Source of the DNA: Heteronotia binoei
Taxonomy: Eukaryota
Assembly: GCF_032191835.1 (NCBI RefSeq)
Contig: NC_083227.1
Coordinates: 30,690,001-30,754,000 of the forward strand
Length of the DNA stretch: 64,000 nucleotides
Direction: 5' to 3'
Below, in pieces: positions 1-34,255 of the stretch (position 1 is its first letter; each line of letters starts with the position of its first letter). A model generated the notes under the pieces. That model ran no database searches. It was not told the DNA's origin and worked only from the letters and a program-made list of their open reading frames with translations. The translations under genes were made by a program, and so were the position numbers.

Positions 1-286
1 GATGATGCCTTGATCTAACAGTGGACAGCAGTCCATGCACAGATATGAAAGTAAGAATTTCTGGCTGTATTTGCAACCGGTTCCCTCCTGCCCTTAATCT
101 CCTGTGCCTCCTTTCCTCTTGTTCCAGAATCCAGATCTCTTTGTTTTTACTTCCCCATTGGAATTTTATATTGCAGTTTTGGGGGACCTGCAACTCACCA
201 CCTCCACCCCTAGTATCAGACTCCTTCCTTCCTTCCTCTGTCAGCTCACAGTTGGTTTACAGTAACTCCATAGGGATTTCATAGGT

Positions 287-643
287 CAGGGGTGGCCAAT
301 GGTAGCTCTCCAGATTTTTTTGCCTACAACTCCAGATGTTTTTGCCTACACAGGAGATGGTGGCAGCTACAAGCATAGCCAGCTTTAAGAGGGGATTGGA
401 TAAAAATATGGAGCAGAGGTCCATCAGTGGCTATTAGCCACAGTGTGTGTGTGTGTGTATACACACACACATATATTGGCCACTGTGTGACACAGAGTGT
501 TGGACTGGATGGGCCATTGCCTGATCCAACATGGCTTCTCTTATGTTCTTAACTCCCATCAGCCCCAGCCATTGGCCATGCTGGCTGGGGCTCATGGGAG
601 TTGTAGGCAAAAACATCTGGAGAGCTACTGTTGGCCACCCCTG
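287..643. mobile_element. hAT-type MITE with a nested CR1 3' fragment (~351-553)
   Basis: TIRs caggggtggccaa / ttggccacccctg; 8-bp TSD tcataggt (279-286) / tcataggc (644-651); interior has CR1-like 3' UTR ending ttctcttatgttctt. Confidence 0.8.
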
Positions 644-1285
644 TCATAGGCTAAAGATGTTCATTGGTGCTTTGCAATTGCTATTGCCTGCCTCTGCATA
701 GCAGCCCCAGGCTTCCTTGGTCTCCCATCAAAAGAGAGACTGAGGCTGACCCTGCTTAGCTTCTGAGATCTGACAAGATCAGGGTAGCTCAAACCATCCA
801 GGTTCTGGGTTAGAAAATCCACACTTTAACAGGAGGGGGCAGAGCAAGAAAGAACTTAATAAGTCTTTTCCCCATTTCTGCATTTTTCTGTCCCTGTCTA
901 GGATGGAGAGAACTCTGCCTGTTTAACCCCTTGAGCATCAGCTTGTGAGCAAGCAGAGGATACCTTAATCATTGTGTGATTTAAAAGAGATGAATAATAA
1001 AGGGGGGGGGAGACTACAGACAAGACAGAGCTGCCATTTACACCTATGGTGGAGAACTGCTGCATCTTTGAGGTTCTAGGTTCAAATCCCCCATGGAAAT
1101 CAAACCACTAAAGCCAGTGCAAACATATCGTGCACCTTAGTCCCATTAATTTCAAGGGGCTTGGCCGATGCCCTGGATCTCGGTGTCTTCTCGGAATACA
1201 GAAGATACGATGCTCCCTTCATCTCTTCTCCTCAGATCCCTCCGCCCCTCCCCTCCTCCCTCATCCATGAGCTCTGATCTCGGAT

Positions 1286-1492
1286 TAGTTGGGCTTGGCT
1301 CCTTTTGCTTCAGTCAAGTAATGGGAAGCGGAAAGGAAGGAGGGACCAGCCAGGAGCACCCAAAACAAACACCTGGAAACTGCCGAGGAGGCACTGAGGG
1401 AGTCCTCCCACCCCACGAGGAGGGGACCAGATCGCTGGTGAAGGAGAGCCGCAGGAGGAGGGTGAAGACGGGAATGGAAAAGAACTGAGCAG
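1286..1492 (+). promoter_or_regulatory. Putative promoter and non-coding first exon of ZNF gene 1
   Basis: ETS-like ggaagcggaaa at ~1324, homologous to the block at 29675-29728 on the opposite strand; donor ag|gtgagc at 1492/1493. Confidence 0.5.
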
Positions 1493-3164
1493 GTGAGCAA
1501 ATTCAGTAGACCACCCTGCAGGAGGAGGAGGAACGGACAGCCATAGAGCCCCTTCCTTGAGTTGCTGTCATTGATCACAGTAGCATATAGGGAATTGCTA
1601 GTATTGAGTCAGATCCTGAGAGAAAGGGGTCTTTCCTGACACCCATTAAATGGAGAGGCCACGGCTTGGGCTTGGCATCTTCAGCTTGTATCAAAAGGAA
1701 ACTGACTTAGAATGAGCCAGATTGTTGACCTGACTAGCCCAACTGGCTAAGGTCTCGAACAGAAGGACCTTTCCTAGCACTTTTACCTGAGATCTTTTAA
1801 CTAGAAACACAGAAGTGAGTCTGCAACTTCCTTGGGAGTACAAGATCAGATTCTGCAGAACACCAAAAACAAAGGTAAATCCCCCATCTTATATTTTTAT
1901 TTCTCCAAAACACGATGAATGGTGCTCATCTTTCCACAGATTTATCTGCCTCGTCAGAACTGTTCCTTTGACCCTGATAATACTAAGAATATCTTCCCAG
2001 TAATGACACCTGCCTCAAGGCTAGTGTTGGTGGGAGCAAACCACCCCCACCCCAACAATCTGCTGGCATCCCAGAAAGAAATAAAATGAATTTCAGCATC
2101 AGCTTTTGTAAGTCAGAGCTCCCTTCATCAGGTTGGCAGGACTCTGTTTTCTTCCAACAAGCTGCTGCTGTTTTCAAAGGTAGGTGCTATTTTCAAATGT
2201 AGCATCAGTTCTGTACCTCACCCATCGCCACTCATCTTTTAAGCAGCATAACAGAATAACTTTAATTACTTTGGAAGCAAGAGGAACATCATTGTTTTAA
2301 CATTTTGTTGGTGATCTTTTACCCATAATTCCTAAGAGCAGGGAAATTCCAAGATACATGCAGTAGATTTAAAGATGTAGAAAGCAGCTTCCAACAACCT
2401 CTATATATATTCAAGCCAGCTAACTTTTATGTATTTAAAGCATTTCTGTGCTGCCTTTTGACCCAATTCTGGGTCACCAAGACAGCAAACATTAAAACAT
2501 GTCAAACATTAGAAACAGTATTTAAATTACAAATATATTTAATATTTAAAACAATGAAACAGAGCACATATAATCACACAAATGAGGAGGGCTAATAAAA
2601 ACTAGTTAGAAGATGCCAAACAAAATGAAAAAGGGTAAGGTACCATTAATTTTTAGATTCTAGGATAAACAGTCTCAAAAGTACTTGATCGCAAATCCAG
2701 AGTGATTCTTTTGTTTTCTGTGTTGCTGTAGCTCACCCTCCCAATTACATAATATATCTTGGTGGGGAATTGCAGTTATATTTCATTGAGGGGCATCTTG
2801 TTTAACATTTGATAGGGTCCCTGATGGGGTTGGAGATGAAGTGGCTTCAACTAGGTGACAAAGTATTTTTTAAAACCAAAATAACCACCTTCCACAGTGT
2901 GCTTTGAGGAAGCCAAAGCTCAAAAGTGTCAGGAGGAAAGGCTGATTTATGGATACAGGATCTGAGTTGGGGGGCGGGCGGGCATGGCAACCTTTTTGCC
3001 AGCTATTTCCATCCTTTCTGAGGGGTAAGGAGTTTCCTTGAACAAATACACCCATTTTTCTCCAAGTCACCTCCACCACCATTTTCAGTGTAAAAAAAGT
3101 AATAACTTGGTTGTTGTTTGATTGTGTATATGCAAACTGTCCCCTCACTCTGCATTTTCCGGGG

Positions 3165-3365
3165 TGAGGCTGTGGCTCAAGTAGCAGAGCACCTGCTTTG
3201 CATGCAGAAGGTCCCAGGTTCAATCCCAGAAACCTCCAGTTTTTTTTAAAAAGGTTCAGCTAGGAGGTAATGTGAAAGACTTCTGCCTAAAACCATGGAG
3301 TCAGAGGAGACAATACTGACCTTGATACACCAGTGATCTGACTCTGTACAAGGCAGTGTTTTAAG
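3165..3365 (+). mobile_element. tRNA-derived SINE (tRNA-Ala-like head)
   Basis: Head ggggtgaggctgtggctcaagtagcagagc...gtcccaggttcaatccc with A/B boxes; body shared with 61860-62070, 37088-37290 and 21935-22085. Confidence 0.7.
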
Positions 3366-3818
3366 TATGAGTTCATTGCTCCTGGCTAGGCTGATGTTAT
3401 AGAATGTTCTCAAGAATTCCAACTGCTGCAAGGGATAGCAGAATAGGAGAGCAGAGGCAGAAGTGAGTTTGATGACGGGGGATGCTGTGGAGAGTGCCCT
3501 TGGAGGCAATGGCAAGAAATTTAAGGCAGAGTGCTAAGGAAACAGGAAAGGGGGTGGGAAGTTAAGGACTCGACAGACTAATGGGAACAGGAGGGCACTG
3601 AGGCGGGGGGAATCGTACTGGGCCTGTTTGGGCTGGGCTGGTCATTTGTTCTGGGGCCAGTTTACACATGCATTTATTTTTGTCCCTCATTGACTACAGC
3701 ATCAACCAATGACCACTGCTCAGGATGAAGGACCAAATTATCATGTTATCAATTTCCATGGAGAAATCCGTGGAGGTGACCTGCTTGGATTGTCTAAATA
3801 TCACCTTTTCCTTCTCAG

Positions 3819-3907
3819 GTTTCCTGATGTCGTTATGAAAAAGGAAGAGGAAGACCCACAGCCTCAGTGCTCTGAGGGAAATAAGAGCTTCCCAGGAGTC
3901 TCTTCAG
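3819..3907 (+). CDS. ZNF gene 1, KRAB-B-like exon 1 (probable ATG at 3835: MKKEEEDPQPQCSEGNKSFPGVSS)
   Basis: Acceptor ccttttccttctcag|, donor tcag|gtaaga; FPDVVMKKEEEDP resembles the three downstream exons; the 5' end is 1 nt short of phase-1 entry. Confidence 0.55.
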
Positions 3908-3939
3908 GTAAGACACAAATTCATTTAGAGTAACATCTA

Positions 3940-4726
3940 GGAAGCCTCTGTAAGGGCGGATCATAAGGCACACTTTGTGTGGTTATAAAGATAGGTGGAA
4001 GAGACTCCTGTGTGCTGTGACCTTTCGGAAAGGCCATCCCCGCAGCTGATCCGCTCTGCAGACTGTATACGAGGAATCCACACTGCAGGTAGCATGATCA
4101 TCTGTGTTTATGTTAGCCTTGGAACTTTTCTGTACTGCCAGTCTTTGGACCTCCTGTGACAATTCCACAAGGCAGCTCTTAATTTCTTTCAATGAATGAA
4201 AGATATTAGCTACTGTTAGAGCTGTGAGTTCAGGATAATTGCACACAGCTGCCTTCGTTGGCTCTGCAACTAAGGTAGCCTCTGTCTCTTCCCCTGCGTC
4301 ACTTTCGTCACTTTCAATTCCTGCCAGAGGTGAGTAACGACTGGAAATAGGAATGGAATATAAATCATTTTTACCAGCAGTAAAGTAATCTATCTTTGTT
4401 TGCTTCTGGGCTGGTTGTAAATTTAATTCTTCAAACTCCCGAGACCATTTGGCTACTCCCATAATTATAGCCGTAGAAAAAGCATTTCGTTAGACACTTT
4501 AAGTCAAACACTAAGTCAGCGAGTAGGACAGCTGGCCCAAGAACTAAAAGCCCGTTATCAGTAGGGAAAAAAGAACATATAGAGCCAATTAAAACTTGCG
4601 ATATCCAGAACATATAGAGCCAATTAAAACTTGCGATATCCAGAACATATAGAGCCAATTAAAACTTGCGATATCCAGAGAAGCTTGCTGCCGCCATCTT
4701 CAGACTGGAACTCTTCCAGAGCTTCC
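3940..4726 (-). mobile_element. LINE 5' end only (5' UTR plus ORF1 N-terminus) flanked by a 14-bp TSD
   Basis: TSD tagagtaacatcta at 3926-3939 and 4727-4740; YY1-like ccgccatctt at 4691-4700; ORF 4462-3983 with acidic and coiled-coil-like segments; no RT and no 3' tail. Confidence 0.6.
4574..4678. repeat. Tandem repeat, 3 x 35 bp, perfect
   Basis: aacatatagagccaattaaaacttgcgatatccag starting at 4574, 4609 and 4644, within the putative LINE 5' UTR. Confidence 0.95.
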
Positions 4727-5109
4727 TAGAGTAACATCTAATTTGTTAGCACCAACTGTATATTTTTTTAACTTGTATTGTTTAATGGTTCTTATTGATT
4801 TTATGATTGCGATCATAGTATACTATGATTTGATGTAAGCCGCCCTGAGCCCACCTTGGTGGGGAGGGCGGGGTATAAATAGAATTAAACATAAACATAA
4901 AATAAACATAAAAAAACATCAAAAAGGCTGAACATTCTGAATTTGAATCTTGCTTATGCCTGAATGGCTTGTGTGGGAGAGTGTGGACCTCACAGACAAG
5001 TTGTTTCACCATGGGAGGAGGTGAAATTTACCCAGCTGACCCAAGCTCCTTCAAAGAAACAGCATTCTTTTTATCAAAGATTTCAGGTTTTCATGGCTGG
5101 CATCATCAT

Positions 5110-5290
5110 TAGGGTTTGTACAATCTTTCGGGCTCAAGTGCCGTGTTCTACTGGAGAAAGTTTTTCTTCCAGACGTTTCGTTCTCAGCTGCAGAGAACAT
5201 CCTCAGTGGCATTGCAGCCGGAGCAGGCGCTCTGACCTTCTTGGCTGCTGTGCATTGAGTGAGGCCAGGGCTGCTGGAGAGCTGCTATTT
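5110..5290 (-). mobile_element. Penelope-like element fragment
   Basis: Carries a canonical PLE-type minimal hammerhead at 5172-5206. Confidence 0.6.
5172..5206 (-). ncRNA. Minimal type I hammerhead ribozyme motif (Penelope type)
   Basis: Minus strand reads cca-CTGAGGA-t-gttctc-tgcagct-gagaac-GAAAC-GTC-tgg: intact core, 6-bp stem II, palindromic ACGU stem III, GUC site, 3-bp stem I. Confidence 0.75.
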
Positions 5291-5625
5291 CTTTTTCCCT
5301 GAAAAGAGACACAATCCTCCTTTCTACTGGAAACTTACACAAATATGCACTTTTAGTCTTGGGAAAGGTAAAATTTCTGTTATCTTGCAACATGCTGTTC
5401 TTCAAATTAATAAGGCTAGATTTTTCTTGATCAGCTGCTCCAATTTGCTATGGACTTAGGGGGAGCCTTGGGAATCTTGCTTGTTAGACTAACTCCAGAA
5501 CTCAGATTACCCACACTAAATAAACATAGGCCATTAAAGTTACCACCTCCAGGATGAGAAATTCCTGGAGATTTGTGGTTGGAGCCTGGGGAGGATTTGG
5601 GAAGGGGAGAGATATCAGCAGGGTA

Positions 5626-5796
5626 CAGGGTTTTTTTTGTAGCAGGAACTCCTTTGCCTATTAGGTCACACACCCCGATGTAGTCAGTCCTCCAAGAGCT
5701 AACAGTAAGAAGAGCCCTGTAAGCTCTTGAAGGATTGGCTACATCAGGGGGTGTGGTCTGATATGCAAAGGAGTTCCAGCTACAAAAAAAGCTCTG
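5626..5796. mobile_element. Palindromic hAT-type MITE
   Basis: Long imperfect TIRs cagggttttttttgtagcaggaactcctttgc / gcaaaggagttccagctacaaaaaaagctctg; TSD gcagggta / ccagggta (7 of 8). Confidence 0.75.
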
Positions 5797-6145
5797 CCAG
5801 GGTATCATGTTGTAGCATCCACCCTCCAAAGCAGCAATTTTCTCCAGGGGAAATATTATCTCTTGTCTGGAGATCAGCTGTAATTCTGGGAGATCTCCGG
5901 ACCCTTCTTGGAGCTTGGGAACCTTACCCAAGGTGGGGCTTGTATGTGGGTGGGCACAGACCACCATGACATCAAATTAATAAAAGAGGGGAATTAAGTT
6001 GTTATCAAAGTCCTGGGTTACAAAAGTCATATAATCAAGCAAACATTAACACTTACTGAGCAAAGGGAAAATTAAATTTATTAAGAGGTAGGCAGAATAG
6101 TCCTTTAATTAGCACATGTGTTTCATCTCTTTCTCTTGCTGTAGG

Positions 6146-6754
6146 TAGGGTTGCCAAATCCAACCCCAGAAATATCTGGGGACTTTGGGGGTGGAGCCAG
6201 GAGACACTGGGGTGGAGCTAGGGAGGAGGGGGGAAACGGCGCCGGGGAGCGTGGCGAGCCGCCCCGCCGCTGCCGCCTCTGCTCCGCTTGCCGTGGCTGC
6301 TCCTCTGAGATGGGCTCAGCCTGAGCCCATCTTGGAGGAGCAGCCACGGCGAGCAGAGTAGAGGTGGCAGCGGCGCGGCGGCCTCGCCCGCTCCGCCTCT
6401 GGGATGGAAGCGGGGGGGTGTGGAGGTGGGCCGAGAGTGTGGCGAGCTGCAAGTCCGGGTCCTAGAAGGGCCCGAATTCTCGGCTCGCCATGCTCCTGGC
6501 CTGCCTCGCCCTCCCCCGCGCTGCTGCCGCCTCTTGGCTGCTCCTCCGAGATGGGCTCAGCCTGGGCCATCTCGGAGGAGAAACTGCGGTGGGCGGGGAG
6601 GGGACGGCAGCGGCGCAGCGGCCTCGCCGGCTCCAGGATCCGGCGGCTCGGCGCCGTTTCCCCCCTCTCCCCCCGCTTCCATTTTTTGGGGGAGCGGGGG
6701 AAGAGGGTGGAAATCCTGGGGTCCCCCACCAGGGCGGGAGGGTTGGGAAGCCTA
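6146..6754. mobile_element. GC-rich hAT MITE (TAGGG-end family) with 2 internal hairpin units
   Basis: Ends tagggttgccaa / ttgggaagccta; perfect 8-bp TSD gctgtagg at 6138-6145 and 6755-6762. Confidence 0.9.
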
Positions 6755-7551
6755 GCTGTAGGTGTTCTCATGAAGCCGCAGGCCATATATTTGCTTCTCC
6801 CTTTCCAAGCCATTCCTGGTTTTTAAAACAAGCCAAATCCCTCTCTTCTTCCCCCTAACCTAATGGTTTTTGGTGTCACCAAGTCACTTCTGCTTATGGA
6901 AATCCTGACTCTGAGCTTTAATAGAGTGCAAATGACCTTCCAAATTTGTAACGTTTATGTCTGGAATGACATATTAACTTCACAACAGCTTTAAGCAAAC
7001 CAGCTTCAGAGACAGCATGGTCAGAGTGTTGGACAAGGCCCCATATTTATACCCTGCTGTGCTACGGAAACTTGTGGGGTGACCTTGGGCCAGGCACACA
7101 CACTTAGCTTAGTAAACCTCATAGTGTTGCTGGTAGGATGAAATGGAGAAGGGTAGAGTGCTGAAGGCCATTTTTGGTTTGCATTGGGGGGAAGTGGAGT
7201 ATAAATGAGGTAAATAAATATTAGTAGCAGTATTTCTCATATACTTTTCTCTGAACTGTTGATTTTGGAATTTTTTCAAAACAGGATGATATGGCTAAAA
7301 AGTCCTGATTTTATTTCTCCCTTTGTGAATCTTGAAATGGGGTGACCAATAAATGTCTGCAGAGGTTCCTACCCCTTTTCCTGTCTCACACTGTTACGTG
7401 GCATCCTTTCTTGCCATCCTTTCTTGTTACTTCTGGTGCTCCATTCAAACACCCTGAAGCTCTTGATGCTGTTTGGGGGAACAGGTCTGGTTTCCCAGAG
7501 GCCATCATCCCAAAACCACCTGTGACTTCTTCCAATCTGTCTCCCGTTTAG

Positions 7552-7650
7552 GATTTTTTGATGTGATAAAAAAGGAAGAGGATAAAGAGTATTGGGCCTT
7601 GGATCCCCATATCCCTGTGGAAAGTAAGATCTTCCCAGCATCTTGTTCAG
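7552..7650 (+). CDS. ZNF gene 1, KRAB-B-like exon 2 (GFFDVIKKEEDKEYWALDPHIPVESKIFPASCS)
   Basis: Acceptor ctcccgtttag|, donor tcag|gtgagt; 99 nt, phase 1-1, open frame. Confidence 0.7.
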
Positions 7651-8099
7651 GTGAGTTTTGAGTACACCTATCCTGGGACCTGCTGATAAATTTATTCTCT
7701 TGCTGTTGCAGATTTCTGCTTGGGGTAAGCAGATTACTTCCCATTGTTCTGAGGCATCTCAACTGAAAAATCCTCAGAAATGTAGAAGGCTGACTAGATT
7801 TTTGTCGTCTAATGCAGTTCTATTATACTTTTGATCATATTTTATCCTGCATTTAGCTCAGCCCTACACTTTCTGGCGCTCTAGGCAAGGCTAACTTCTG
7901 ACGCCCCCCCCCACTACACTGATAATGTCACTGAGTCACATGGGGGGCAACCAATTTGGTGCCCCCAGAAGGCCAGCGCCCTAGGCATTTGCCTAGTGGC
8001 AGGGTTGGCCCTGCAGAGAGGGACACATCATTCTCCCCTCCTCCACTTGATCCTCCCTGTGACTTAGATTAGGCTGAGAGAGAAGAACAATGGGCTCAA

Positions 8100-8338
8100 G
8101 CAAGAATCAGTGTGGTTGGTATTTAATCTGGAGAACTGGGTTTGATTCCCCACCCTTCCTGCACACAAAGCCTGCTGGGTGACCTTGGGCTGGTCACTGT
8201 TCTCTCAGAATTCTCTCAGCCCCACTTGCTTCATGAAGTGCCTGTTGTGAGGAGAAGGAAAGGAGATTATATGCTGCTTTGGGACTCTTTGAGGTAGAGA
8301 AAAGCAAGGTATAAAAACCTAATATTATTATTATTCTC
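8100..8338 (+). mobile_element. MIR/Squam3-like tRNA SINE (degraded)
   Basis: Similar to the cleaner copy at 25581-25858; (tta)n tail. Confidence 0.6.
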
Positions 8339-9407
8339 ATGGTCACAGTGAGCAATGTGGCAGTGGGAAGTAGGGTCCCCAGTCCTAGTCTGACATTCTA
8401 GGCCCTACATCAGAGTGGCTCTCTAAATATAGACTATCTAGGATTTACATCCAGGCCCACCTACACCCTAAGGGGGAACCAGACCAACAAGCCTTGGCAG
8501 TGTTGGCACTATTATAAGCAGTCGAGATGGCCATTCTGCAGCCCATATATTGTTCTTGGGCCTTCTCACTGAAGTGAACCTGCACCTGGATTGGAGTAGC
8601 TGCTTCAGACTACAGATGGGGACTCATACGCTTGAATGCTCCTATGTTAAATATCTTTACACAGAGAAAACTAGCATGTCAGGGAACAAAGTAGTCCAGA
8701 AGTCTTCCCTCTATTTCTGATGTGGAGAGCACCCCCCCCCCCCCCACAGTTACATGAATATTCATCTTCAGTTTTAAGTATGACAGCCCACAGAAAAGGT
8801 TATCCCCTCAGTGACAGAGAGGCTTCTCTCTGTCAAATGATTTCTGTGATCCTTTCATTAATGCAAGCAGAATAGTTTGTGGTGTTTGATCTGTGGAAAG
8901 AAACCTGTACAGTTTGGCATCTTGTAGAACCATTAGGCTCCATCACATTTTTTTTCAATCCCTCTCTTCCTCCAAGTTGCTGAGGGAGGTTCTTCTTTTT
9001 GCCTCTTTATCTTCCCAACAGCCCTACAAGGTAGGCTTGTTTCAGAGAGTGACCAGTCAAGGTCACTCAGTGAGCAGGGAGGGGCAGATTTGAACTTGCT
9101 TTTTCCAGATCTTTGTCTGATTCTCTAACCACTTCACATCACCAGGGGTAACAGCTTTTAAAATCTCCATCTATCCCTCTGACAAAATACCTGGTGATAT
9201 GGTTTCCCTCCATGCCATACAAAGCTTCACTTATGCATTTCCACACATTCTGCCTCTATTAAAGGGACAGGACTTTTCCCCATGGCCAGCTGGTACACTG
9301 GTTCCCAAAGTCAGCTTCCAAAGCCCTCTTTTCTTTCTAAAACATACAGCATGTCTCTGTTATGTTTATGGGAGAATATTTACATAATGCCTTGCAAGTA
9401 CCAAGAT

Positions 9408-9640
9408 GATGATGATGATGATGGATTTATACCCCGCCCTTAACTCTGAATCTCAGAGTCCCACAACAGACACCCTGTGAGGTAGATGGGGCTAAGAGAG
9501 CTCTCACAGAAGCAGCCCTTTCAAGAACAGCTCTATGAGAGCTATGGCTGACCCAAGGCCTTCCAGCAGCTACAAGTGGAAGAGCAGGGAATCAGATCCC
9601 ATTCTCTCAGATAAGGGTCCACACACTTAACCACTACAGC
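9408..9640 (-). mobile_element. MIR/Squam3-like tRNA SINE
   Basis: Reverse complement of the 25581-25858 family; (gat)n tail on the + strand. Confidence 0.7.
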
Positions 9641-9697
9641 TCTCCAATTGCTTTAAATTGCTTCCGTTTTAAAGATACTCCTTTTCTTTCTGAGCAG

Positions 9698-9811
9698 AAT
9701 TTCGCAGTCCCAAAGTCAATGTAACATCCTGGCTTGAACAAGAAGAAAAACCAGCTGCTCTCCGTCATCCACGACCAGAGGAAAATGAGGTTGTCTCAGA
9801 CAACAACACAG
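9698..9811 (+). CDS. ZNF gene 1, KRAB-B-like exon 3 (EFRSPKVNVTSWLEQEEKP...)
   Basis: Acceptor cttttctttctgagcag|, donor acag|gtgagg; 114 nt, phase 1-1; PKxxxxSWLEQEE is the closest match to the KRAB-B pattern PKPDLISxLEQGEEP. Confidence 0.8.
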
Positions 9812-9953
9812 GTGAGGGAATCCCATGATGCAACTGCAGCCCAGCCTATGTGAGCTGCCTAACAGCAGCTGCCGGGAACTTACCTCCACAATTGCCACAG
9901 GGCCTCACTTGGATCATACTATGATGTAGGAGATGAGGCTTCAGACCCCCACC

Positions 9954-11400
9954 CAGGGGCGGATTAACCATTAGGCAGACAAAGCACGTGTTTAGGGCAC
10001 CAGGGCCAAAGGGGGCACCACAAAGTTGGAAAAGGGTGAAAAAAAAAAAGAATGAAGATTTGTAAAAAAAAAAAATTGATAAAACTAGTGCAAGTTGATT
10101 ATGGTGCACCCTAGGGTTATCTTCTATTTTTTGCTGGCGAGATGCAGTGTCATAGGCTATGTTTAAAAGTAAAATTATGGAGTCAAATTCAGTGGTCATG
10201 ACAGTAATTTCAATGACCCTCTCTGCCCCTTTTTAATTTCAGCACCATGTAAACGTCAAAAATGAAGCGTGTTCAGTTGAGTGGTGTGCAAAAGAGAAAA
10301 CGTGTAAAAGAATGAGCAAAAGAATCTGTCTATTGTAGCCAAGAGAGGAAAGCTGACAGATTTCTTCTTACAAACTGCAGAGAAAGATGGTCCATATCAA
10401 AACCAGTATCAGTCTTTAGAGACAGGAAGTGAATCAAATTATCTCCTTCAACAGAAACAGGCAGTGTTGGTGCAAGGCCAGATTTTCATGATAACATTGC
10501 ACAAGATGAAGTGCCACAACCTGGACCGACTTCCATGACAAGATGTGTAAATGCTTTTGAACCGTCCAAGGAGTTTAGAGAACTGACCAAGGATGAAATG
10601 AACAAAGCTAAGGACCCAGGGTTGTGGGATGAATTTTATGGTGATGATGTGACTTATTGGGGTGCTTGTGGACTCAGTGAATGTCAGCACCACAATGGGC
10701 CATTTCACAAATCGTGTCACAATTTCATCAGTGGGAAACCAAAGAGATACTGTTCACAGAAGATATTTTTTGGAATAAAAGCCAATGGTGAACACTACAA
10801 GAAAGAATGGCTTTTGTACTCTCCTTCAAAAGGATCAGTTTACTGTTTTGTTTGTAAACTATTTGCACCCAAAGGGTCAACACATTTTGCTAGAAATGAG
10901 GAATTCAGTGACTGGTGAAACACTACTGTAATTGACAATCATGAAAAAAGTACAACTCACCGAGATGCCATGTTGACACATTTAACTTGGAAACAAGGCT
11001 TAGGCTTGACATATTTAACTTGGAAACAAGGCTTAGTCATTGGAAAAACAAATTGAAGAGGAGTACTGTTACTGGGAGAATGTGCTTCGGCGTGTTGTAG
11101 CAGTCATTTGCTCACTGGCTGAACGAGGATTGGCATTCCGAGGAAAAGTGGAAAAACTTGGGTCTTTCAATAATGGGAATTATTTGGGGCTACTTGAATT
11201 GATAAATCGGTTTGACCCATTCTTGGCTGCTCACATATCATGGTATGGCAATGCTGCAAAAGGCAACCCTTCGTACCTGTCCAAAACGATATGTGAGGAA
11301 CTTATTGAGTTAATGGCAAAGAAAGTGCACTCCGTCATCATTGATGAAATTAATGTTTCTGGGTACTTCAGTCTGTCTGTGGACTCAATGCCTGATACAT
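9954..11400 (+). mobile_element. hAT transposon 5' fragment (ZMYM1/Tip100-like transposase, degenerate, 3'-truncated)
   Basis: Left end caggggcggattaacc; ORF pieces WLLYSPSKGSVYCFVCKLF (TTF-type zinc finger) and RGLAFRG...NGNYLGLLELI...YLSKTI...SLSVDSMPD; stops and a ~33-bp duplication near 10979-11035. Confidence 0.8.
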
Positions 11401-12498
11401 TACCTGGTCTAAATGTTGTTGTTTTTTCTCATGGTCACACAACATTGAAAACATCCCACTGCTGTTTCATTCCTTCCCCATTTTCTGTTACTAAAAAAAA
11501 TGGATTCTCTCGCACTGCTTGGGGGGGGGGCAAGCAACATGTATTCGCAAAAAAGCCTTATTTGGGGATCTGAACAGTTTTTTGTTTTGGTGTTCTGAGG
11601 CAACTTGCCCATGAAACTTCAGCTCCCCATTGCATGCATAAAATCAAACAATTCCCCGTCCCAAAATGATTTACTGTGAATGAGAATGGACGGAACCCTG
11701 ATGGGGAAAACCTGAGAAAAAGTGTGGGTGTGAACTTGTCATGACCAAAGCATGATAGTTAAAACTGCAGTAACACAGGGACAACTTGAAAGGCGGGTGC
11801 CATGTGAAAGACAGCTGTGTGAATGGCGAAATCCACTTTAAACATCACTGAAGTGGATCGAAACTGCATTATTTAGCACGTGTGAAAGCTCCCACTGTGA
11901 TAGAGGAACAGAGAATTACTCTTTTCTGCTGTGCCATTTTCCCAATCAGGAGTGCATCCCCCAGCCTGCTTTACACCCACATAGAGAAAAAAAAAGACAG
12001 ATGCTCCTAGTGCGCCTGTCTTTTTTTCTCAGTCCCAGCTTTAGGCAGCCTAGGGGAGGGCAGTTTCCAATAAAATTGTAAACGGGAAAAGAGAACTCCT
12101 TTTCTTTCCCCAGCTCTGTGGCTCCAATTTATTTATCTGTTAAAACATGCAGCCTACCCATTTAACAAGCTCTGGGCAGCTAACAATAGAAGTTAAAAAT
12201 AATCTCTCCAATTCTGAATACTATGTTTGAAAACTACAAAAATTTATCCCATAAACATTAGAAATGGTCACTCTCCAAATTCCATTCAATAATGAATGTT
12301 CTCAAAATGCATCCACAAAATCAATCTGAAGCTTCTTTCTGAGGCCAAATGACACACCTATTATTCTGTCCACAGAACTCCCGAACTGTGTATTGTTTAG
12401 CTCACAGAAGAGCTTCCAGGTTATTCAAGGAGAATGCCTGGCATTGTAACAAAAATCTTCTGGAAAATCACTCCTTTTCTTTCCCTTTTCCTCATCAG

Positions 12499-12600
12499 GG
12501 CTCCCAGATGTGATCATAAAGTTGGAACAAGAAGAACCTGGCTTCTCAGAATACCACCAAGAATGGGAAGGAAAAGAGTCTATTGCAGTTGCTGTCTCAG
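12499..12600 (+). CDS. ZNF gene 1, KRAB-B-like exon 4 (GLPDVIIKLEQEEPGFSEYHQEWEGKESIAVAVS)
   Basis: Acceptor cttttcctcatcag|, donor tcag|gtaagg; 102 nt, phase 1-1; splices in frame to 13926. Confidence 0.8.
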
Positions 12601-12997
12601 GTAAGGAATGGGCTTGTTATTTGGAGAAACCAAATGATACAGCCTTCCTAGGACTTTCCCACTTCAGACTGTAAGTGGGAGACCTCAGATATAATGCTTT
12701 TCTTTTTCTCTTAACCGTTCCTGCTTGTAGAAATGTAGCAGGTAAGGGAAAGAGCCTAAGGCCTTAGCAAGGATTTGAAAAGGGGATTTCAGAGGCTGAG
12801 GCTGGAAGCCAGCCAAAGCAAACTGAGGCGGAGTTTGTAGGTGCAGTCCTAAAAATGCTCTCCAGAGAGTAATAGACCTGAGTGGGATTCTGAGTCAATC
12901 TCCTTAGGATTGCACTCTATGTGGTCCTTCAGATTCAGAAAGAAGGCTCAGCTTCCTCAGATAGGTGGGACGGCCACATTTCCAGGTAGTTCTTAAA

Positions 12998-13807
12998 TAG
13001 GGTTGCCAAGTCCCATTTTTAAAATATCTGGGGACTTTGGGGGTAGAGCCAGGAGACTTTGGGGGTGGAGCCAGGAGACACTGGGGTGGAGCTAGGGGGA
13101 GGGGGGAAACGGCGCCGGGGAGCGTCGCTGCGCTGCCGTGGCTGCTCCTCCGAGATGGGCTCAGGCTGGGCCCATCTCGGAGGAGCAGCTGCGGGGGGGG
13201 GGGGGGGCGTTGCGGCGGCGTCCCGCGCTCCGCCTCTGCATTGGAATGGGGAGGGTGTGGAGGCAGGCCAGGAGCGTGGCGAGCCGCGAGTCCGGGTCCT
13301 AGAGGGGCCCGGATTCGCGGCTCGCCATGCTCCTGGCCTGCCTCCACCCTCCCCTTCTCTGGTTTGGCTGCTCCTCCGAGATGGGCTCAGGCTGGGCCCA
13401 TCTCAGAGGAGCAGCTGCCGGGGGGGGGGGGGCGGCGCGGCAGCGTCGCGCGCTCCGCTCAGCCTCTGGGTTGGAATGGGGGGGGGGTGGAGGCGGGCCA
13501 GGAGCGTGGCGAGCCGCAAGTCCAGGTCCTAGAGGGGCCCGGATTCGCGGCTCTCCATGCTCCTGGCCCGCCTCCACCCTCCCCTTCTCTGCTTTGGCTG
13601 CTCCTCCGAGATGGGCTCAGCCTGGGCCCATCTCGGAGGAGCAGCTGCGGGGAGGGAGGGGGCGGCAGCAGCGCGGCAGCGTCGCCCGCTCTGGGATGGG
13701 GTGCCCGCCGTTTCTCCCCCTCCCCCCGCTTCTGTTTTTGGGGGGAGCGGGGGAAGAGGGTCGAAAACCTGGCATCCCCCGCCAGAGCGGGAGGGTTGGG
13801 AAGGCTA
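12998..13807. mobile_element. GC-rich hAT MITE (TAGGG-end family) with 3 internal hairpin units
   Basis: Ends tagggttgccaa / ttgggaaggcta; perfect 8-bp TSD ttcttaaa at 12990-12997 and 13808-13815; same family as 6146-6754. Confidence 0.9.
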
Positions 13808-13925
13808 TTCTTAAAAGAAATGAACAGAAAATGAAAGATTTCCTCATAACCATAATTCTTGACCGCCCTAGATAGAACGTTGGTAAGTGGATCTTACATA
13901 TACAGATGTTATTTTATTCCAACAG

Positions 13926-15454
13926 GAAACAGGCTGTCAAGCAAGAATCTTCACTTGTGTGTTTCTGAGGATATGGGCCCAAATGAAACATCACTCAGAA
14001 GAGTCAAAGGGCTCATTTCCAACTGTTATGAGAAGGGAGAAATGTGGGAAGATCCAGATGGAGTGGAAAGGGAGCCTCGAATCCACCCAGCAATGTTGGT
14101 GAAGAAGATCCCTCTTTGTGGGGAGGACGAGAGGATTTGTGATGAAAGGGGGGATATACATGAGAGGATTCTCAAGTGTGGAAAGATCCTCATATTGGAT
14201 TCAAACCTCCTGCTACATGTGAGGGAGAAACTCCAGGCTTGCATGGACTGTGGGAAAAGTTTTTGTGAAAAATCGAGCCTCATTAGACACAAGAAGACAC
14301 ACACAGGGGAGAAGTTGCATACCTGTGCAGAGTGTGGAAAAAGATTCAGCCTCAAATCAAGCCTCATTAGGCACCATCGGAACCATACAGGTGAGAAAGA
14401 AGGGAATGGCCTTGGATTAAGTCAGAACTCAGACCTCAGAGAAAAAAAGGGGACCCATATGAGGAAGGAACCCTATAGGTGTTACACCTGTGGGAAGACC
14501 TTCAGAAATAAGGCACACTTTGTCATACATGAGAGAACCCATACGGGAGAGAAACCATTTCAGTGCCCTGACTGTGGGAAGAGCTTCAGAAACTCCTCCC
14601 ACCTTATCTTGCATAAGAGAACTCACACAGGTGAGAAGCCATACAAGTGCTCCATTTGTGGGAAAAGCTTCAATCAGAGCTCGAATCTTATCAGACATGA
14701 GAGGACCCACACAGGGGAGAAACCATACTCATGCTCAGTGTGTGGGAAAAGCTTCAGCTGGGGACCCGAACTACAGATCCATGAGAGAATCCACACAGGG
14801 GAGAAACCATACAAATGCTCAGACTGTGAGAAATCATTCAGCAGTTACTCCAGTTTTATAAGGCACAAGAGAATCCATACGGGGGAGAAACCCTACCAGT
14901 GCTCCAAATGCAGTAAGAGCTTCCACCAAAGTTCAGATCTCAGGGCACATGAAAGAAGTCACCATCCAAGTAGGACTTTGTTAGAAGATTTTGGGAACGT
15001 CTTGTGTCCCCTCGAGGACAAGGGAATGCACACAGACGAGAAGCTATTCAAATGCTCAGCTTGTGGGAAAAGTTTCAGTCGGAGGGCGCACCTCACAAGG
15101 CATGAGGGAACACATATGGGAAAGAAGCCGTACAAATGCTCACACTGTGGGAAAAGCTTCAATCAGACTTCCAACCTCATTCGGCACGAGCGGACGCACA
15201 CAGGAGAAAAGCCATACACTTGTGCCAGCTGCAACAAGAGCTTCAATAGGAAATCCCACCTCCTCCGACATCAGAGGACCCACATAGGAGAGAAGCCATA
15301 CAATTGCTCTGATCAGAGATCAGATCTCATCCAACATGGAGGAAATAATTCAGAGGAGAAATCTCAGCTGTTCCCTCTATGCAGGAAAAGTGAGAACTTT
15401 GCACTACATCACGAAAGCCACACAGGAGGAAAAGCGTGTGCATCGTCAGACTAA
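13926..15454 (+). CDS. ZNF gene 1, terminal C2H2 zinc-finger exon (11 intact fingers plus several degenerate ones)
   Basis: Acceptor ttttattccaacag| with phase-1 entry (GNRLSSKN...); CxxC...HxxxH arrays with TGEKPY linkers to the stop at 15454; AATAAA at 15542 and 15598. The model from ATG 3835 gives 638 aa. Confidence 0.95.
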
Positions 15455-23178: not shown

Positions 23179-23984
23179 TCATGGAACGAGCACTTCCACA
23201 GGTTCTCCTGAGTGGGCAGGAAGCAGAGTGGAATTCTGATTTAATCTCCTGCCAGACTCAGAGGGTTTTGGTAGATTTGGTCGCACATGGATCCTCTCGT
23301 GTTTAAGAAGGCCAGAACTCTGCTTGAACCTTTTCCCACAGTGAATACATTTATATGGTTTCAGTCCGGTGTGGTTTCTCTTATGTCTTGTCAGACTAGA
23401 TTTGTTACTGAAGGTGTTGCCACAGTCTGAACACCGATAGGGCTTTTCGCCAGTGTGGATCCTCTCATGCTTTACCAGGTTGGAACTTTGGGAAAAGCTT
23501 TTCCCGCAGATGGAGCAGCTATAGGGCGTCTCTCCCGTGTGGGTTCTCCCGTGGACAAGGAGGCTGGAGCTCTGCTTGAAGCTCTTACCACAATCTGAGC
23601 ATTTGTATGGTTTCAATCCAGTATGGTTTCTCTCATGCCTGATAAGGCTTGAGCTCTGGCTGAACTTTTTCCCACAGATCACGCAGCCAAAGGGTTTCTC
23701 TCCAGTGTGTTTCCTCTTGTGTCTCGTCAAGCTGGATTTGTTACTGAAGCTGTTCCCACACTCGGAGCACGTATACGGTTTCTCTCCTGTGTGGGTTCTC
23801 TCATGGGTGAGGAGGGCTGATCGTTTCTTGAAGCATTTCCCACAGTCAGGGCATTTGTACCGCTTCTCCACCACATTTTGCCTCTCGCGGTTAACGAGGC
23901 TGGATTTGTCACTGAAGTTTTTGCCATAGATTGTGTAGTAATGTGGTTTTTCTCCAGGGTAGATTATTTCACACTCATTGTCTT
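23179..23984 (-). CDS. ZNF gene 2, terminal C2H2 zinc-finger exon (7 intact fingers)
   Basis: Acceptor cctttctctgtttcag| with phase-1 entry (EDNECEII...); seven CxxC...HxxxH fingers with TGEKP/TGLKP linkers; stop at 23179. Confidence 0.95.
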
Positions 23985-25015
23985 CTGAAACAGAGAAAGG
24001 CAACATCAATCCTTACACAGTCATTCTTTGTTTTAAAGATCCAATCTATTAAAATTTTAATTCAATGGTATTTAACTCTAAAGCAACTTTCTCATATTTA
24101 TAAATCTACCAGTTTATGATGCTGGAAAAGTTGTGGAGCAGATCCAAGCCTCTCTTCCTTCTATTGGGTGAGGCTCCTCCCCCTCCTAGTCCCCTGGGAA
24201 AGGATGGAAAGAGCCAGAACTTCCTTTGCCCAGTTCCCTGGATCCCATGAGAGAGATACAAAGAAAGCACCTTTAAGACCAAGGAGCGCTGATGTTTTAA
24301 GCACCCTTTATTTTAAGTTTTTTAAAAAAATCTTTAATTGTGTTTGTCTGTGTCCTTTATAAAGTTTATATGCTACCTAATCATAAATAGGTACATATAT
24401 GGCCCGGTCCAACATGGCTCAGCCCAGCAAGGTCTCATTTATGTCAGATCCAGCCCTCATAACAAATGAGTTTGACACCCCTGTGTAAGGGTAGTTAATA
24501 TGAAAGTGAGTGACTGGCTCAAAATCACCCAGTAATCTTCATATCCAAGTGGGGATAGGAATCCAAGCATCCTCAGTTCTAAACAGCTACTTTAATCAAT
24601 ACACCACACTGTGGAGTTTTTACACAATACGATCTGCAAAAATGAGCAGATAAAGTTTATTTTATAGTTTCTTCTTGATTCAAACAGCTCTTTTAAACTT
24701 GTTTAAAAATTAAATTTAACACAATTACTGCAACTCGTGGTGGAGGAAAGTGCCATTACATCACAGCCAACTTACAACAATCCTGAATTTTGGAATTTTT
24801 AGCAATTTTCATAAGCCACTCAAATGAGCAAGTTTGGTAGACGAGGGCAGGTTGTTACAATAAATACAATGAAGATAAATAAGATGGTAGGCAAACTAAA
24901 GGAGGGAGCAGGATACAAATGGACTAAATAAAAAATAAAGTCCCTTCTCATCGTGCAACCTATAAACACCCCTTCCCCCCACAGCCTGATTAAATGAGAA
25001 TGAAAGCATTCATAC

Positions 25016-25091
25016 CTAACGAGATGATGCCTGCATGGTTTTGCTGCATGACGTTCACTTTTGATTTGAATTCAACAACTCTGCCTTGCTT
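25016..25091 (-). CDS. ZNF gene 2 candidate exon, degenerate KRAB-A C-terminal half (VMQQNHAGIISL)
   Basis: Acceptor tccctctacaacgcacag|, donor ttag|gtatga; phase-1 end joins 23984 in frame; ATG at 25049 would give 279 aa. Confidence 0.45.
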
Positions 25092-25312
25092 CTGTGCGTT
25101 GTAGAGGGACATCATCCGTGTCGGGAAGAGAGAATTTTTAAAAAGAAAAAAGTATGAGCTAGTGCTGGGAGATACATGGTTTCCCCATTTACCCATATCC
25201 ATTTGAATACAGTTACAAGCTGTATCAGATGCAAAGTGAATCTGTAGATCAAGATCAATAACTTTCCAAAGCATTCAATGGGTGATCTCAAAGCAGCTGT
25301 TTTACTGCAAAG

Positions 25313-33600: not shown

Positions 33601-34255
33601 GTCACTACTGCCCAGGGTGCCCACTATTTCCACTTCTTCAATCAATTCTTCCTTGTTGGTGAGAATCAAATTCAAGATAGCAGATCCCCTTGTTTCCTTC
33701 TTCACTTTCTGAAAAAGGAAGTTGTCAGCAAGACAAGTCAGGAATCTATTTGACTTTTCACTTTTAGCAGAGTTGGACTTCCAACAGATGTCCAGGTAAT
33801 TGAAATCTCCCTTGATCACTGTATCTCTTCTCTTGGAGAACTTTGCAATCTGCTGTAGAAGTATCTCATCCAAGTCCTCTGCCTGACTTAGTGGTCTATA
33901 GCAGACCCCCACAATAATATCACTGTTGTTTCTTACTCCTTTTATTTTTACCCAGAGACTCTCAACTGAGCTGCCATGCTCTGATTCACATATTTCCTCA
34001 CAAGTATATACCTCCTTCACATATGCTGCTACGCCTCCACCCTTTCTCATTTGCCTGTCCCTTTTAAATAAGTTGTACCCCTGAATCCTAATATTCCAGT
34101 TGTGAGTGTCATCCCACCATGTTTCTGTAAGGCCTATTATGTCATAGTCTCCTTCCTTTATTAGGACTTCCAGTTCCTCCTGTTTGTTTCCCATAATCTG
34201 TGCATTAGTGTAGAGACATTGGAATCCACGTTGTATGCATCCTGATGTTGTCACT
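30689..34255 (-). mobile_element. CR1 LINE, near-complete ORF2 (APE endonuclease and RT), frameshifted, interrupted by a MITE
   Basis: CLYTNAQ...GLTETWWDD...VGVCYRP...GDFNY (EN); LDYSKAFDKVPH, GVPQGSVLGPVLFNIFI, KFADDTKL (RT); (attctatg)n-type tail at ~30689-30706. Confidence 0.95.
32901..33571. mobile_element. hAT MITE (TAGGG family) nested in the CR1
   Basis: Ends taggcttgccaa / ttggcaacccta; perfect TSD cctaagac at 32893-32900 and 33572-33579. Confidence 0.92.

What the first reader, a model, noticed from the sequence alone, without database searches (positions are those of the whole stretch)
3819..12600. Zinc-finger gene with four tandem KRAB-B-like micro-exons and no KRAB-A or SCAN exon
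Seen: four 89-114-nt exons, each ending in a phase-1 CAG|GT donor, encode variants of [F/L]-x-D-V-x-x-[K/W]-x-E-x-E-E-x-P, and exons 2-4 splice in frame into the 11-finger exon. I found no KRAB-A or SCAN exon between 1 and 13.9 kb. Exon 1 is 1 nt short for phase-1 entry, as expected if an upstream KRAB-A exon was lost and an internal ATG (3835) took over. Established: KRAB-A recruits TRIM28/KAP1, KRAB-B only modulates it, and genes normally carry one B exon. Inference: an exon-duplicated, acidic 'poly-B' N-terminus, or an alternatively spliced cassette set, giving a non-repressive or differently acting ZNF. This could be an undescribed squamate ZNF architecture.
Basis: partly seen in the sequence, partly recalled or inferred. 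Interest (0 to 1): 0.7.

Follow-up and report, generated by a model that had tools for sequence, protein, structure and literature searches.

The report
Gecko zinc-finger gene with four KRAB-B-derived exons
A gecko zinc-finger gene has replaced the usual KRAB repressor domain with four tandem copies of the small KRAB-B exon, an old, conserved layout that other lizards also use but that I found no paper describing.

Summary
Four exons (3819-3907, 7552-7650, 9698-9811, 12499-12600) have AG acceptors and CAG|GT donors. Exons 2-4 are phase 1-1 and join in frame to an 11-finger exon (13926-15454).

The gene is already annotated. NCBI's Heteronotia binoei model XP_060094008.1 (638 aa, "zinc finger protein 774-like") uses exactly these exons and starts at ATG 3835. 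Paroedura, Eublepharis, Gekko and a skink (Lerista) have equivalent models with the same MKKEEE start.

The KRAB-B likeness holds:
- The only PDB match of the exon profile is the ZNF568 KRAB-B box.
- hhalign places the profile on the B box of sauropsid KRAB-ZNFs.

No KRAB-A or SCAN exon is detectable on the + strand of 1-13.9 kb.

Tandem B-like units are not unique to this gene. They occur in Varanus (after a true KRAB-A plus B), skinks, agamids, anoles and other geckos.

Three of the four units carry a conserved psi-K-x-E plus acidic run, which is a SUMO consensus, inside a predicted disordered N-terminus. I propose SUMO-dependent, KAP1-independent action. This is inference only.

The 5' exon and cassette usage remain untested.

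The scan had notes on other KRAB remodelling in this genome, but none on tandem B exons. Verdict: a new variant of a known kind, of moderate interest.

The parts
3819..3907 (+). Exon 1 (89 nt). It is a truncated B-like unit of K-type. CDS starts at ATG 3835, and 3820-3834 encode the relic FPDVV upstream of the Met. The donor is TTCAG|GTAAGA.
   Evidence: identical to residues 1-24 of P0001
3835..3837 (+). Start codon used by the NCBI model. The same MKKEEE start is found in models from four geckos and a skink.
7552..7650 (+). Exon 2 (99 nt, phase 1-1). K-type unit G-FFDVIKKEEDKEYW...KIFPASCS, with psi-K-x-E at IKKE.
9698..9811 (+). Exon 3 (114 nt, phase 1-1). This unit is of the canonical KRAB-B type (SPKVNVTSWLEQEEKP) and has no lysine at the K position.
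12499..12600 (+). Exon 4 (102 nt, phase 1-1). K-type unit G-LPDVIIKLEQEEPGF..., with psi-K-x-E at IKLE. It is the unit closest to the squamate consensus and to the ZNF568 KRAB-B box.
13926..15454 (+). Last coding exon: about 110 aa of linker, then 11 intact C2H2 fingers with two degenerate gaps and a broken 12th finger. The stop codon is at 15452-15454.

Best explanation
This is a real, already annotated C2H2 zinc-finger gene of Heteronotia binoei. It is conserved across geckos and probably also present in skinks.

Its effector end is built from four tandem duplicates of the KRAB-B exon. The KRAB-A exon, which binds TRIM28/KAP1, is absent. Translation starts at a methionine inside the first unit, which was once an internal phase 1-1 exon.

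The units belong to a squamate-wide module of about 33 aa with consensus G-FPDVIIKLEQEEEPW...FP..SS. In other lizards this module sits behind genuine KRAB-A plus B, or in front of piggyBac-derived and MADF proteins.

Shown: the exon anatomy, the conservation, the homology to KRAB-B, the absence of KRAB-A and SCAN from the window and from the protein models, and a predicted disordered acidic N-terminus.

Inferred: units 1, 2 and 4 carry psi-K-x-E followed by an acidic run, which is the SUMO consensus in its negatively charged (NDSM) form. I therefore think the N-terminus most likely works as a set of SUMO-acceptor short linear motifs that give KAP1-independent, SUMO-dependent regulation, probably repression. 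I put this mechanism at about 0.3. The structural and evolutionary part I put at about 0.85.
For: - Anatomy and frame.
- Exact match to NCBI XP_060094008.1. Orthologues in Paroedura (XP_077187046.1) and Eublepharis (XP_054834915.1) keep all four units at 51-83% identity, against 61-66% for the linker and 83-85% for the fingers.
- Gekko kuhli and Lerista models share the MKKEEE start.
- KRAB-B homology. The unit profile has a single PDB hit, ZNF568 residues 94-107 PDVIFKLEQEEEPW, E 0.082. hhalign against 13 full-length sauropsid KRAB-ZNFs aligns 29 columns to the B box only, E 9e-5, probability 59%. A profile of foreign units hits the B box of every canonical KRAB-ZNF tested at 12-25 bits. Exon size and phase equal those of KRAB-B exons.
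- No KRAB-A or SCAN.
- Varanus XP_044275329.1 has Pfam KRAB at 11-51, a canonical B at 54-68, then two units.
- Lysine conservation. In 33 K-type units, K is found 32 times and R never, and E at +2 is found 32 times.
- There are 3 psi-K-x-E sites in the 129-aa N-terminus against 0.35-0.42 expected, P about 0.003-0.006, at conserved positions in all orthologues.
- AlphaFold2 gives pLDDT 20-35 and no secondary structure over residues 1-137.
- Precedent: in human ZNF746, a small exon behind KRAB carries SUMO-acceptor K189, and K189R abolishes repression by the N-terminal segment (PMC6923878).
Against: - No RNA evidence. The junctions, the 5' exon and inclusion of all four exons therefore rest on gene models and conservation.
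- Only 3.8 kb of upstream sequence lies in the window.
- The Gekko kuhli model lacks the exon-2 peptide. That may be alternative splicing or an annotation gap.
- The hhalign probability is only 59%, and the Pfam KRAB model does not cover the B box.
- SUMOylation is inferred from a 4-residue consensus. The same stretch also fits a SUMO-interacting-motif pattern or an acidic activation motif.
- Unit 3 lacks the lysine.
- The foreign units were retrieved with a profile made from the window's own exons, so the test is not fully independent.
Confidence: 0.6

Rival explanations
1. It is an ordinary KRAB- or SCAN-ZNF. A KRAB-A or SCAN exon lies upstream of the window start and is spliced to exon 1, and the public models are merely 5'-truncated.
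For: - Exon 1 has a strong acceptor, and relic coding sequence lies upstream of its ATG.
- Only 3.8 kb of upstream DNA is available.
- Relatives such as Varanus XP_044275329.1 have KRAB-A plus B in front of such units.
- RNA was not tested.
Against: - Exon 1 is entered in phase 2, whereas KRAB-A and B-type exons end in phase 1, so a canonical upstream exon would be out of frame.
- Five models from five genera all start at the same Met: three by NCBI Gnomon and two from other annotations.
- A plausible non-coding first exon with donor CAG|GTGAGC at 1493 has a TGA two codons before the junction in the frame that feeds exon 1. This exon is unverified.
Confidence: 0.1
2. Exons 2-4 are an alternatively spliced cassette set. 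Isoforms would then carry different numbers of units, and there would be no fixed four-unit protein.
For: - Exons 2-4 are all symmetric (phase 1-1, with lengths divisible by 3) and all end in G, so any subset can be skipped in frame.
- The Gekko kuhli model goes from unit 1 straight to unit 3.
- The Eublepharis protein is labelled isoform X1.
Against: - The three NCBI models include all four units.
- Each unit is conserved at protein level over the gecko radiation, so all are used at least in some transcripts.
- No junction data either way.
Confidence: 0.3
3. The units do not act through SUMO. They would be an acidic and aromatic activation region, or a SUMO-interacting motif (IIKL plus an acidic run), or merely a tolerated disordered spacer.
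For: - The N-terminus has net charge -14 and 11 aromatic residues in 129 aa and is predicted disordered.
- KRAB-B alone does not repress (PMC6923878; PMC9753469).
Against: - The lysine is invariant and never replaced by arginine in 33 K-type units, and E at +2 is invariant too. A merely acidic patch or a spacer does not predict this.
- Conservation appears to extend from geckos to skinks, which argues against a neutral spacer.
Confidence: 0.25
4. The resemblance to KRAB-B is convergent. The units would be an unrelated Glu-rich motif, as FiNZ is in cyprinid fish.
For: - The motif is short and compositionally biased.
- Pfam finds nothing.
- A salmon ZNF with IIVKEEEEDP units was also retrieved.
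Against: - The alignment to the B box runs over 29 columns, not only the acidic core.
- Exon length and phase are the same.
- The units sit directly behind canonical B in Varanus, Tiliqua, Sphaerodactylus and Lerista proteins.
- Mammalian ZNF568 B is PDVIFKLEQEEEPW.
Confidence: 0.1

Closest known systems
KRAB-B box of KRAB zinc-finger proteins (for example ZNF568, ZNF10, sauropsid KRAB-ZNFs)
   Same: - The core is the same: P-D-V-I-x-x-L-E-Q-x-E-E-P-W.
- Both are exons of about 100 nt in phase 1-1, placed just before the finger exon.
- Both are predicted disordered.
- Profile matches.
   Different: - Here there are four copies in tandem and no KRAB-A in front.
- Three copies have I/M-K in place of S-Q, which creates psi-K-x-E.
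- The first copy supplies the start codon.
Middle exons of the DUF3669-KRAB-ZNFs (human ZNF746 exon 5 with SUMO-acceptor K189)
   Same: - A small exon between KRAB and the finger exon carries a SUMO-consensus lysine.
- In ZNF746 that lysine is needed for repression by an N-terminus that does not stably bind TRIM28 (PMC6923878).
   Different: - Sequence similarity to ZNF746 exon 5 was not tested, because I had no reference sequence for it.
- ZNF746 keeps DUF3669 and a variant KRAB-A, and its exon is not tandemly repeated.
FiNZ domain of cyprinid ZNFs (Wells et al. 2023, PMC10547256)
   Same: - It is a short, Glu-rich, lineage-specific module.
- It is encoded by a small exon upstream of a single finger exon.
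- It stands in for KRAB, and its mechanism is unknown.
   Different: - FiNZ is a single 28-aa unit in fish, with no reported similarity to KRAB.
- The gecko units are KRAB-B derived and tandem.
KRAB-less or KRAB-truncated sauropsid ZNF genes noted elsewhere in this genome (scan notes s1-318586, s1-323889, s1-318591)
   Same: The theme is the same: old, conserved remodelling of the KRAB end of squamate ZNF genes, including starts at internal methionines.
   Different: - Those cases keep a relic of KRAB-A.
- This gene keeps only B-type exons, multiplied.

Membership tests
KRAB-B box (subdomain of KRAB) | Core sequence like KPDVISxLEQGEEPW | tested here: met
   The only PDB hit is ZNF568 residues 94-107. 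hhalign aligns to the B-box columns at E 9e-5. A foreign-unit profile hits the B boxes of 15 canonical KRAB-ZNFs. The Pfam KRAB model does not cover B, so it gives no hit.
KRAB-B box (subdomain of KRAB) | Own small exon of about 96 nt, phase 1-1, upstream of the finger exon | tested here: met
   Exons 2-4 are 99, 114 and 102 nt, phase 1-1. Exon 1 is 89 nt and 1 nt short. The typical size of KRAB-B exons is from my own knowledge.
KRAB-B box (subdomain of KRAB) | Follows a KRAB-A box in the same protein, one B per KRAB | tested here: not met
   P0001 has no PF01352. There is no KRAB-A in 1-13925. There are four copies, not one.
KRAB-B box (subdomain of KRAB) | Enhances KRAB-A-dependent TRIM28 binding and repression | not testable with these tools
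   This needs a binding or reporter assay.
KRAB zinc-finger protein (KZFP) | KRAB-A box (Pfam PF01352) N-terminal to a C2H2 array | tested here: not met
   The C2H2 array is present with 11 fingers. KRAB-A is absent from the protein models and from the window. An exon upstream of the window is not excluded.
SCAN zinc-finger protein | SCAN domain (PF02023) | tested here: not met
   There is no SCAN hit in the + strand segments of 1-13925 or in the precomputed Pfam lists for P0001-P0003.
SUMO consensus site (psi-K-x-E; negatively charged NDSM type) | psi-K-x-E in a disordered region with acidic residues just downstream | tested here: met
   The sites are MKKE, IKKE and IKLE at residues 2, 31 and 103, conserved in the orthologues. 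They are enriched over shuffles. pLDDT is below 35. The motif definitions come from PMC3395311.
SUMO consensus site (psi-K-x-E; negatively charged NDSM type) | Lysine is actually conjugated to SUMO by UBC9 | not testable with these tools
   This needs a biochemical assay or proteomics.

The most novel reading that the evidence does not exclude
The K-type unit (FPDVIIKLEQEEEPW) would be a squamate innovation. In this reading a KRAB-B exon was converted into a SUMO-acceptor (or SUMO-binding) module and then multiplied by exon duplication. It was also shuffled onto zinc-finger, piggyBac-derived and MADF genes. It would give these proteins a TRIM28-independent, dose-tunable repression domain that can fully replace KRAB-A, as in this gene.
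Probability: 0.2. Interest if true: 0.7.

Novelty: new variant of a known kind. Interest (0 to 1): 0.45.

Why it matters
KRAB-B has no clear function of its own. Here a lineage has kept B-type exons for roughly the age of the gecko-skink split, multiplied them and discarded KRAB-A. This suggests that the B-type sequence, or its lysine-bearing variant, can act independently.

If the units are SUMO sites, this gives a simple, testable route to KAP1-independent action by zinc-finger proteins. It would also give a parallel to fish FiNZ and to the human ZNF746 middle exons.

In practice, the unit profile could improve annotation of squamate ZNF genes, where these exons carry no domain label.

Tried and rejected
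- **Read laying on window 1-6000.** A second try beside them was blocked by the cap. There is therefore no RNA evidence.
- **Handling of places 743-783.** The local script scanned the translated whole window. From then on, those segments were excluded.
- **The look-up of encoding contigs was closed.** No orthologue DNA, no upstream flank beyond the window and no dN/dS could be obtained.
- **No exon joining by me.** I used the database protein P0001 by id, and the exons one by one by reference.
- **Pfam on the four exon peptides:** nothing.
- **Word search with the N-terminus of P0001:** only the three gecko orthologues.
- **Word search with the Tiliqua N-terminus.** It returned ordinary single-B KRAB-ZNFs. 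These served as a control but showed no further tandem-unit genes.
- **ESM Atlas:** weak leads only.
- **Noise in the big HMM search.** Five of its 17 hits were unrelated tandem-repeat proteins.
- **CpG islands rejected.** The GC-rich, CpG-rich blocks at 6.1-6.9 kb and 13.0-13.8 kb looked like promoters but are two copies of one TIR element.
- **Literature searches.** They found no description of tandem KRAB-B exons, and the Xenopus FAX/FAR lead gave nothing in the library.


Full report
**What is there**

The window is from Heteronotia binoei.

| Exon | Coordinates | Length (nt) |
|---|---|---|
| 1 | 3819-3907 | 89 |
| 2 | 7552-7650 | 99 |
| 3 | 9698-9811 | 114 |
| 4 | 12499-12600 | 102 |

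Each follows a pyrimidine tract plus AG and ends in CAG|GTRAG. Exons 2-4 are symmetric, phase 1-1. The finger exon is entered in phase 1 at 13926 and runs to the stop at 15452-15454.

Counting from ATG 3835, the pieces add up to 1914 nt = 638 codons. A word search with the linker of the finger exon returned a 638-aa NCBI protein, XP_060094008.1 "zinc finger protein 774-like". Its sequence is exactly these pieces. The gene model is therefore already public.

I searched them one by one by reference, and used the database protein by its id.

**Is it more than chance, and is it conserved?**

- Orthologous models in Paroedura picta (650 aa) and Eublepharis macularius (627 aa) keep all four exon peptides and the same MKKEEED start.
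- Identity per micro-exon is 51-83%. The non-finger linker gives 61-66% and the finger array 83-85%.
- A full HMM search of 1.84 billion representatives with the profile of the four peptides gave 17 proteins at E ≤ 1e-3. Five are unrelated tandem-repeat noise and one is a salmon zinc-finger protein with IIVKEEEEDP units. The other eleven, one of them P0001 itself, are squamate.
- Among the squamate hits are a Gekko kuhli orthologue, whose model lacks the exon-2 peptide, and a partial Lerista (skink) protein. The Lerista protein has the same MKKEEEE start and three further units in the same order.
- A profile built only from units of non-orthologous squamate proteins finds exactly the four exons among 2671 six-frame segments of the window. 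Their E-values are 3e-11 to 4e-7 and the next best is 0.83. On exon 1 the match begins at FPDVV, five codons upstream of the ATG.
Compared with exons 2 and 4, it has one base instead of two between the acceptor and the Phe codon.

**Are the units KRAB-B-like?**

Pfam cannot tell, because its 42-position KRAB model matched only the A box (residues 11-51) of a true KRAB protein and gave no hit on the exon peptides. Three other tests agree.

- The unit profile has a single match in the PDB sequence set: ZNF568, residues 94-107, PDVIFKLEQEEEPW, E 0.082.
- hhalign of the profile against 13 full-length sauropsid KRAB-ZNFs picks one place in a 633-column template. That place is the 29 columns starting at PDVLSQLERGEEPW directly behind KRAB-A (E 9e-5, probability 59%).
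- The foreign-unit profile hits the B box of each of 15 canonical KRAB-ZNFs at 12-25 bits.

Exon size and phase also match those of KRAB-B exons.

In Varanus komodoensis XP_044275329.1, Pfam KRAB covers residues 11-51, a canonical B follows at 54-68, and two units (GFPDVIIKLEKEEPW, GFPDSVMKQEQEEEPW) come next.

A Tiliqua piggyBac-derived protein starts inside KRAB-A, then has B and two units. An Anolis sagrei protein has one unit in front of a MADF domain. A Phrynocephalus protein has about eight units.

Tandem B-type units are therefore a recurrent squamate module, not a peculiarity of this gene.

**No KRAB-A or SCAN**

- None of the 114 stop-free + strand segments of at least 36 aa in 1-13925 matches KRAB, SCAN, BTB or DUF3669. 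The only notable hit is a hAT-type DUF4371 relic in intron 3.
- A KRAB A+B HMM built from 16 sauropsid proteins finds no A box on either strand. It touches only the B part, weakly, on exons 3 and 4.
- The precomputed Pfam lists of the three orthologues also lack KRAB and SCAN.

What lies upstream of the window is unknown. A candidate non-coding first exon ends at a CAG|GTGAGC donor at 1493. In the frame that would feed exon 1 it has a TGA two codons before the junction. This would explain why all the models start at 3835, but the exon is unverified.

- As a result there are no junction counts, no 5' end, no orthologue DNA and no dN/dS.
Local scripts excluded them from then on.
The local scan still included those places.

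**How it most likely works**

The 129-aa N-terminus has net charge -14. AlphaFold2 predicts it to be disordered, with pLDDT 20-35 and no secondary structure.

Aligning 42 units from 13 squamate proteins shows two types:
- Seven are of the canonical B kind (I/T-S-Q/W-L-E). Exon 3 belongs here.
- Thirty-three have a hydrophobic residue then K at those positions. In these, K occurs 32 times and R never, and E two places later occurs 32 times.

This gives psi-K-x-E followed by an acidic run, which is the SUMO consensus in its negatively charged form (definitions in PMC3395311).

The gene has three such sites (MKKE, IKKE, IKLE), conserved in every orthologue. Shuffles give 0.35-0.42 expected sites, P about 0.003-0.006.

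There is a human precedent. In ZNF746, a small exon behind a weak KRAB carries SUMO-acceptor K189. K189R abolishes repression by an N-terminal segment that does not stably bind TRIM28 (PMC6923878).

I therefore propose SUMO-dependent, KAP1-independent regulation, probably repression. This step is inference, at about 0.3. The same stretch also fits a SUMO-interacting-motif pattern or an acidic activation region.

**Comparison and novelty**

The closest known things are:
- the KRAB-B box (same sequence and same exon type, but here multiplied and without A);
- the ZNF746-type middle exons;
- as an analogue only, the fish FiNZ domain (PMC10547256).

The gene fails the defining test for a KRAB-ZNF, because it has no KRAB-A.

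Searches of the paper library found no description of tandem KRAB-B exons. The survey of lizard ZNF genes that I read looked only for single known effector domains (PMC3971581).

Earlier notes of this scan describe other KRAB remodelling in the same genome, but none describes tandem B exons.

**Verdict**

This is a new variant of a known kind, already present in annotations but unnamed, and of moderate interest.

Noticed in passing
window 6146-6860 and 12998-13810: These are two copies of one GC-rich element with terminal inverted repeats (TAGGGTTGCCAA... and ...GGGAAGCCTA) and internal palindromes or 230-nt tandem units. They sit in introns 1 and 4 and mimic CpG islands.
   Followed up: partly
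window 3827-3838: An upstream ATG at 3827 opens a 3-codon uORF (ATG TCG TTA TGA). Its stop overlaps the main start codon at 3835. It might modulate translation.
   Followed up: no
window about 1150-1493: This is a moderately GC-rich stretch ending in a strong donor, CAG|GTGAGC, at 1493/1494. It is a candidate non-coding first exon of the gene. In the frame feeding exon 1, a TGA lies at 1486-1488. It is unverified because the reads tool was lost.
   Followed up: partly
window 11040-11570 (+): A 177-aa open frame in intron 3 matches DUF4371, a hAT-type transposase region (E 3e-5). It is a transposon relic.
   Followed up: no
window 23182-24009 (-) and 24993-25274 (-): A convergent neighbour has a 276-aa C2H2 finger exon. 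About 1 kb upstream on that strand lies a weak match to the tail of KRAB-A (VNVMQQNHAGIISLG, E 0.33). No B-like units were found for this neighbour.
   Followed up: partly
window 41869-44910 (-): This is an uninterrupted 1014-aa frame with reverse transcriptase, RNase H and integrase domains, in a 60% GC block. It is a Ty3/gypsy-type LTR retrotransposon pol.
   Followed up: no
window 30784-34254 (-) and 55358-56392 (-): These are LINE fragments, with endonuclease and reverse-transcriptase pieces in shifted frames.
   Followed up: no
window about 15290-15340 (end of the finger exon): Heteronotia has a broken 12th finger ([16 protein letters not shown]). Eublepharis keeps an intact one at this place (CSDCGKSFNQRSNLLQHEGSH).
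   Followed up: no
P0009 (Oncorhynchus kisutch XP_031670044.1): This salmon zinc-finger protein is built of repeated blocks. Each block has an IIVKEEEEDP-type psi-K-x-E acidic unit followed by three fingers. It is a possible convergent use of the same short motif.
   Followed up: no
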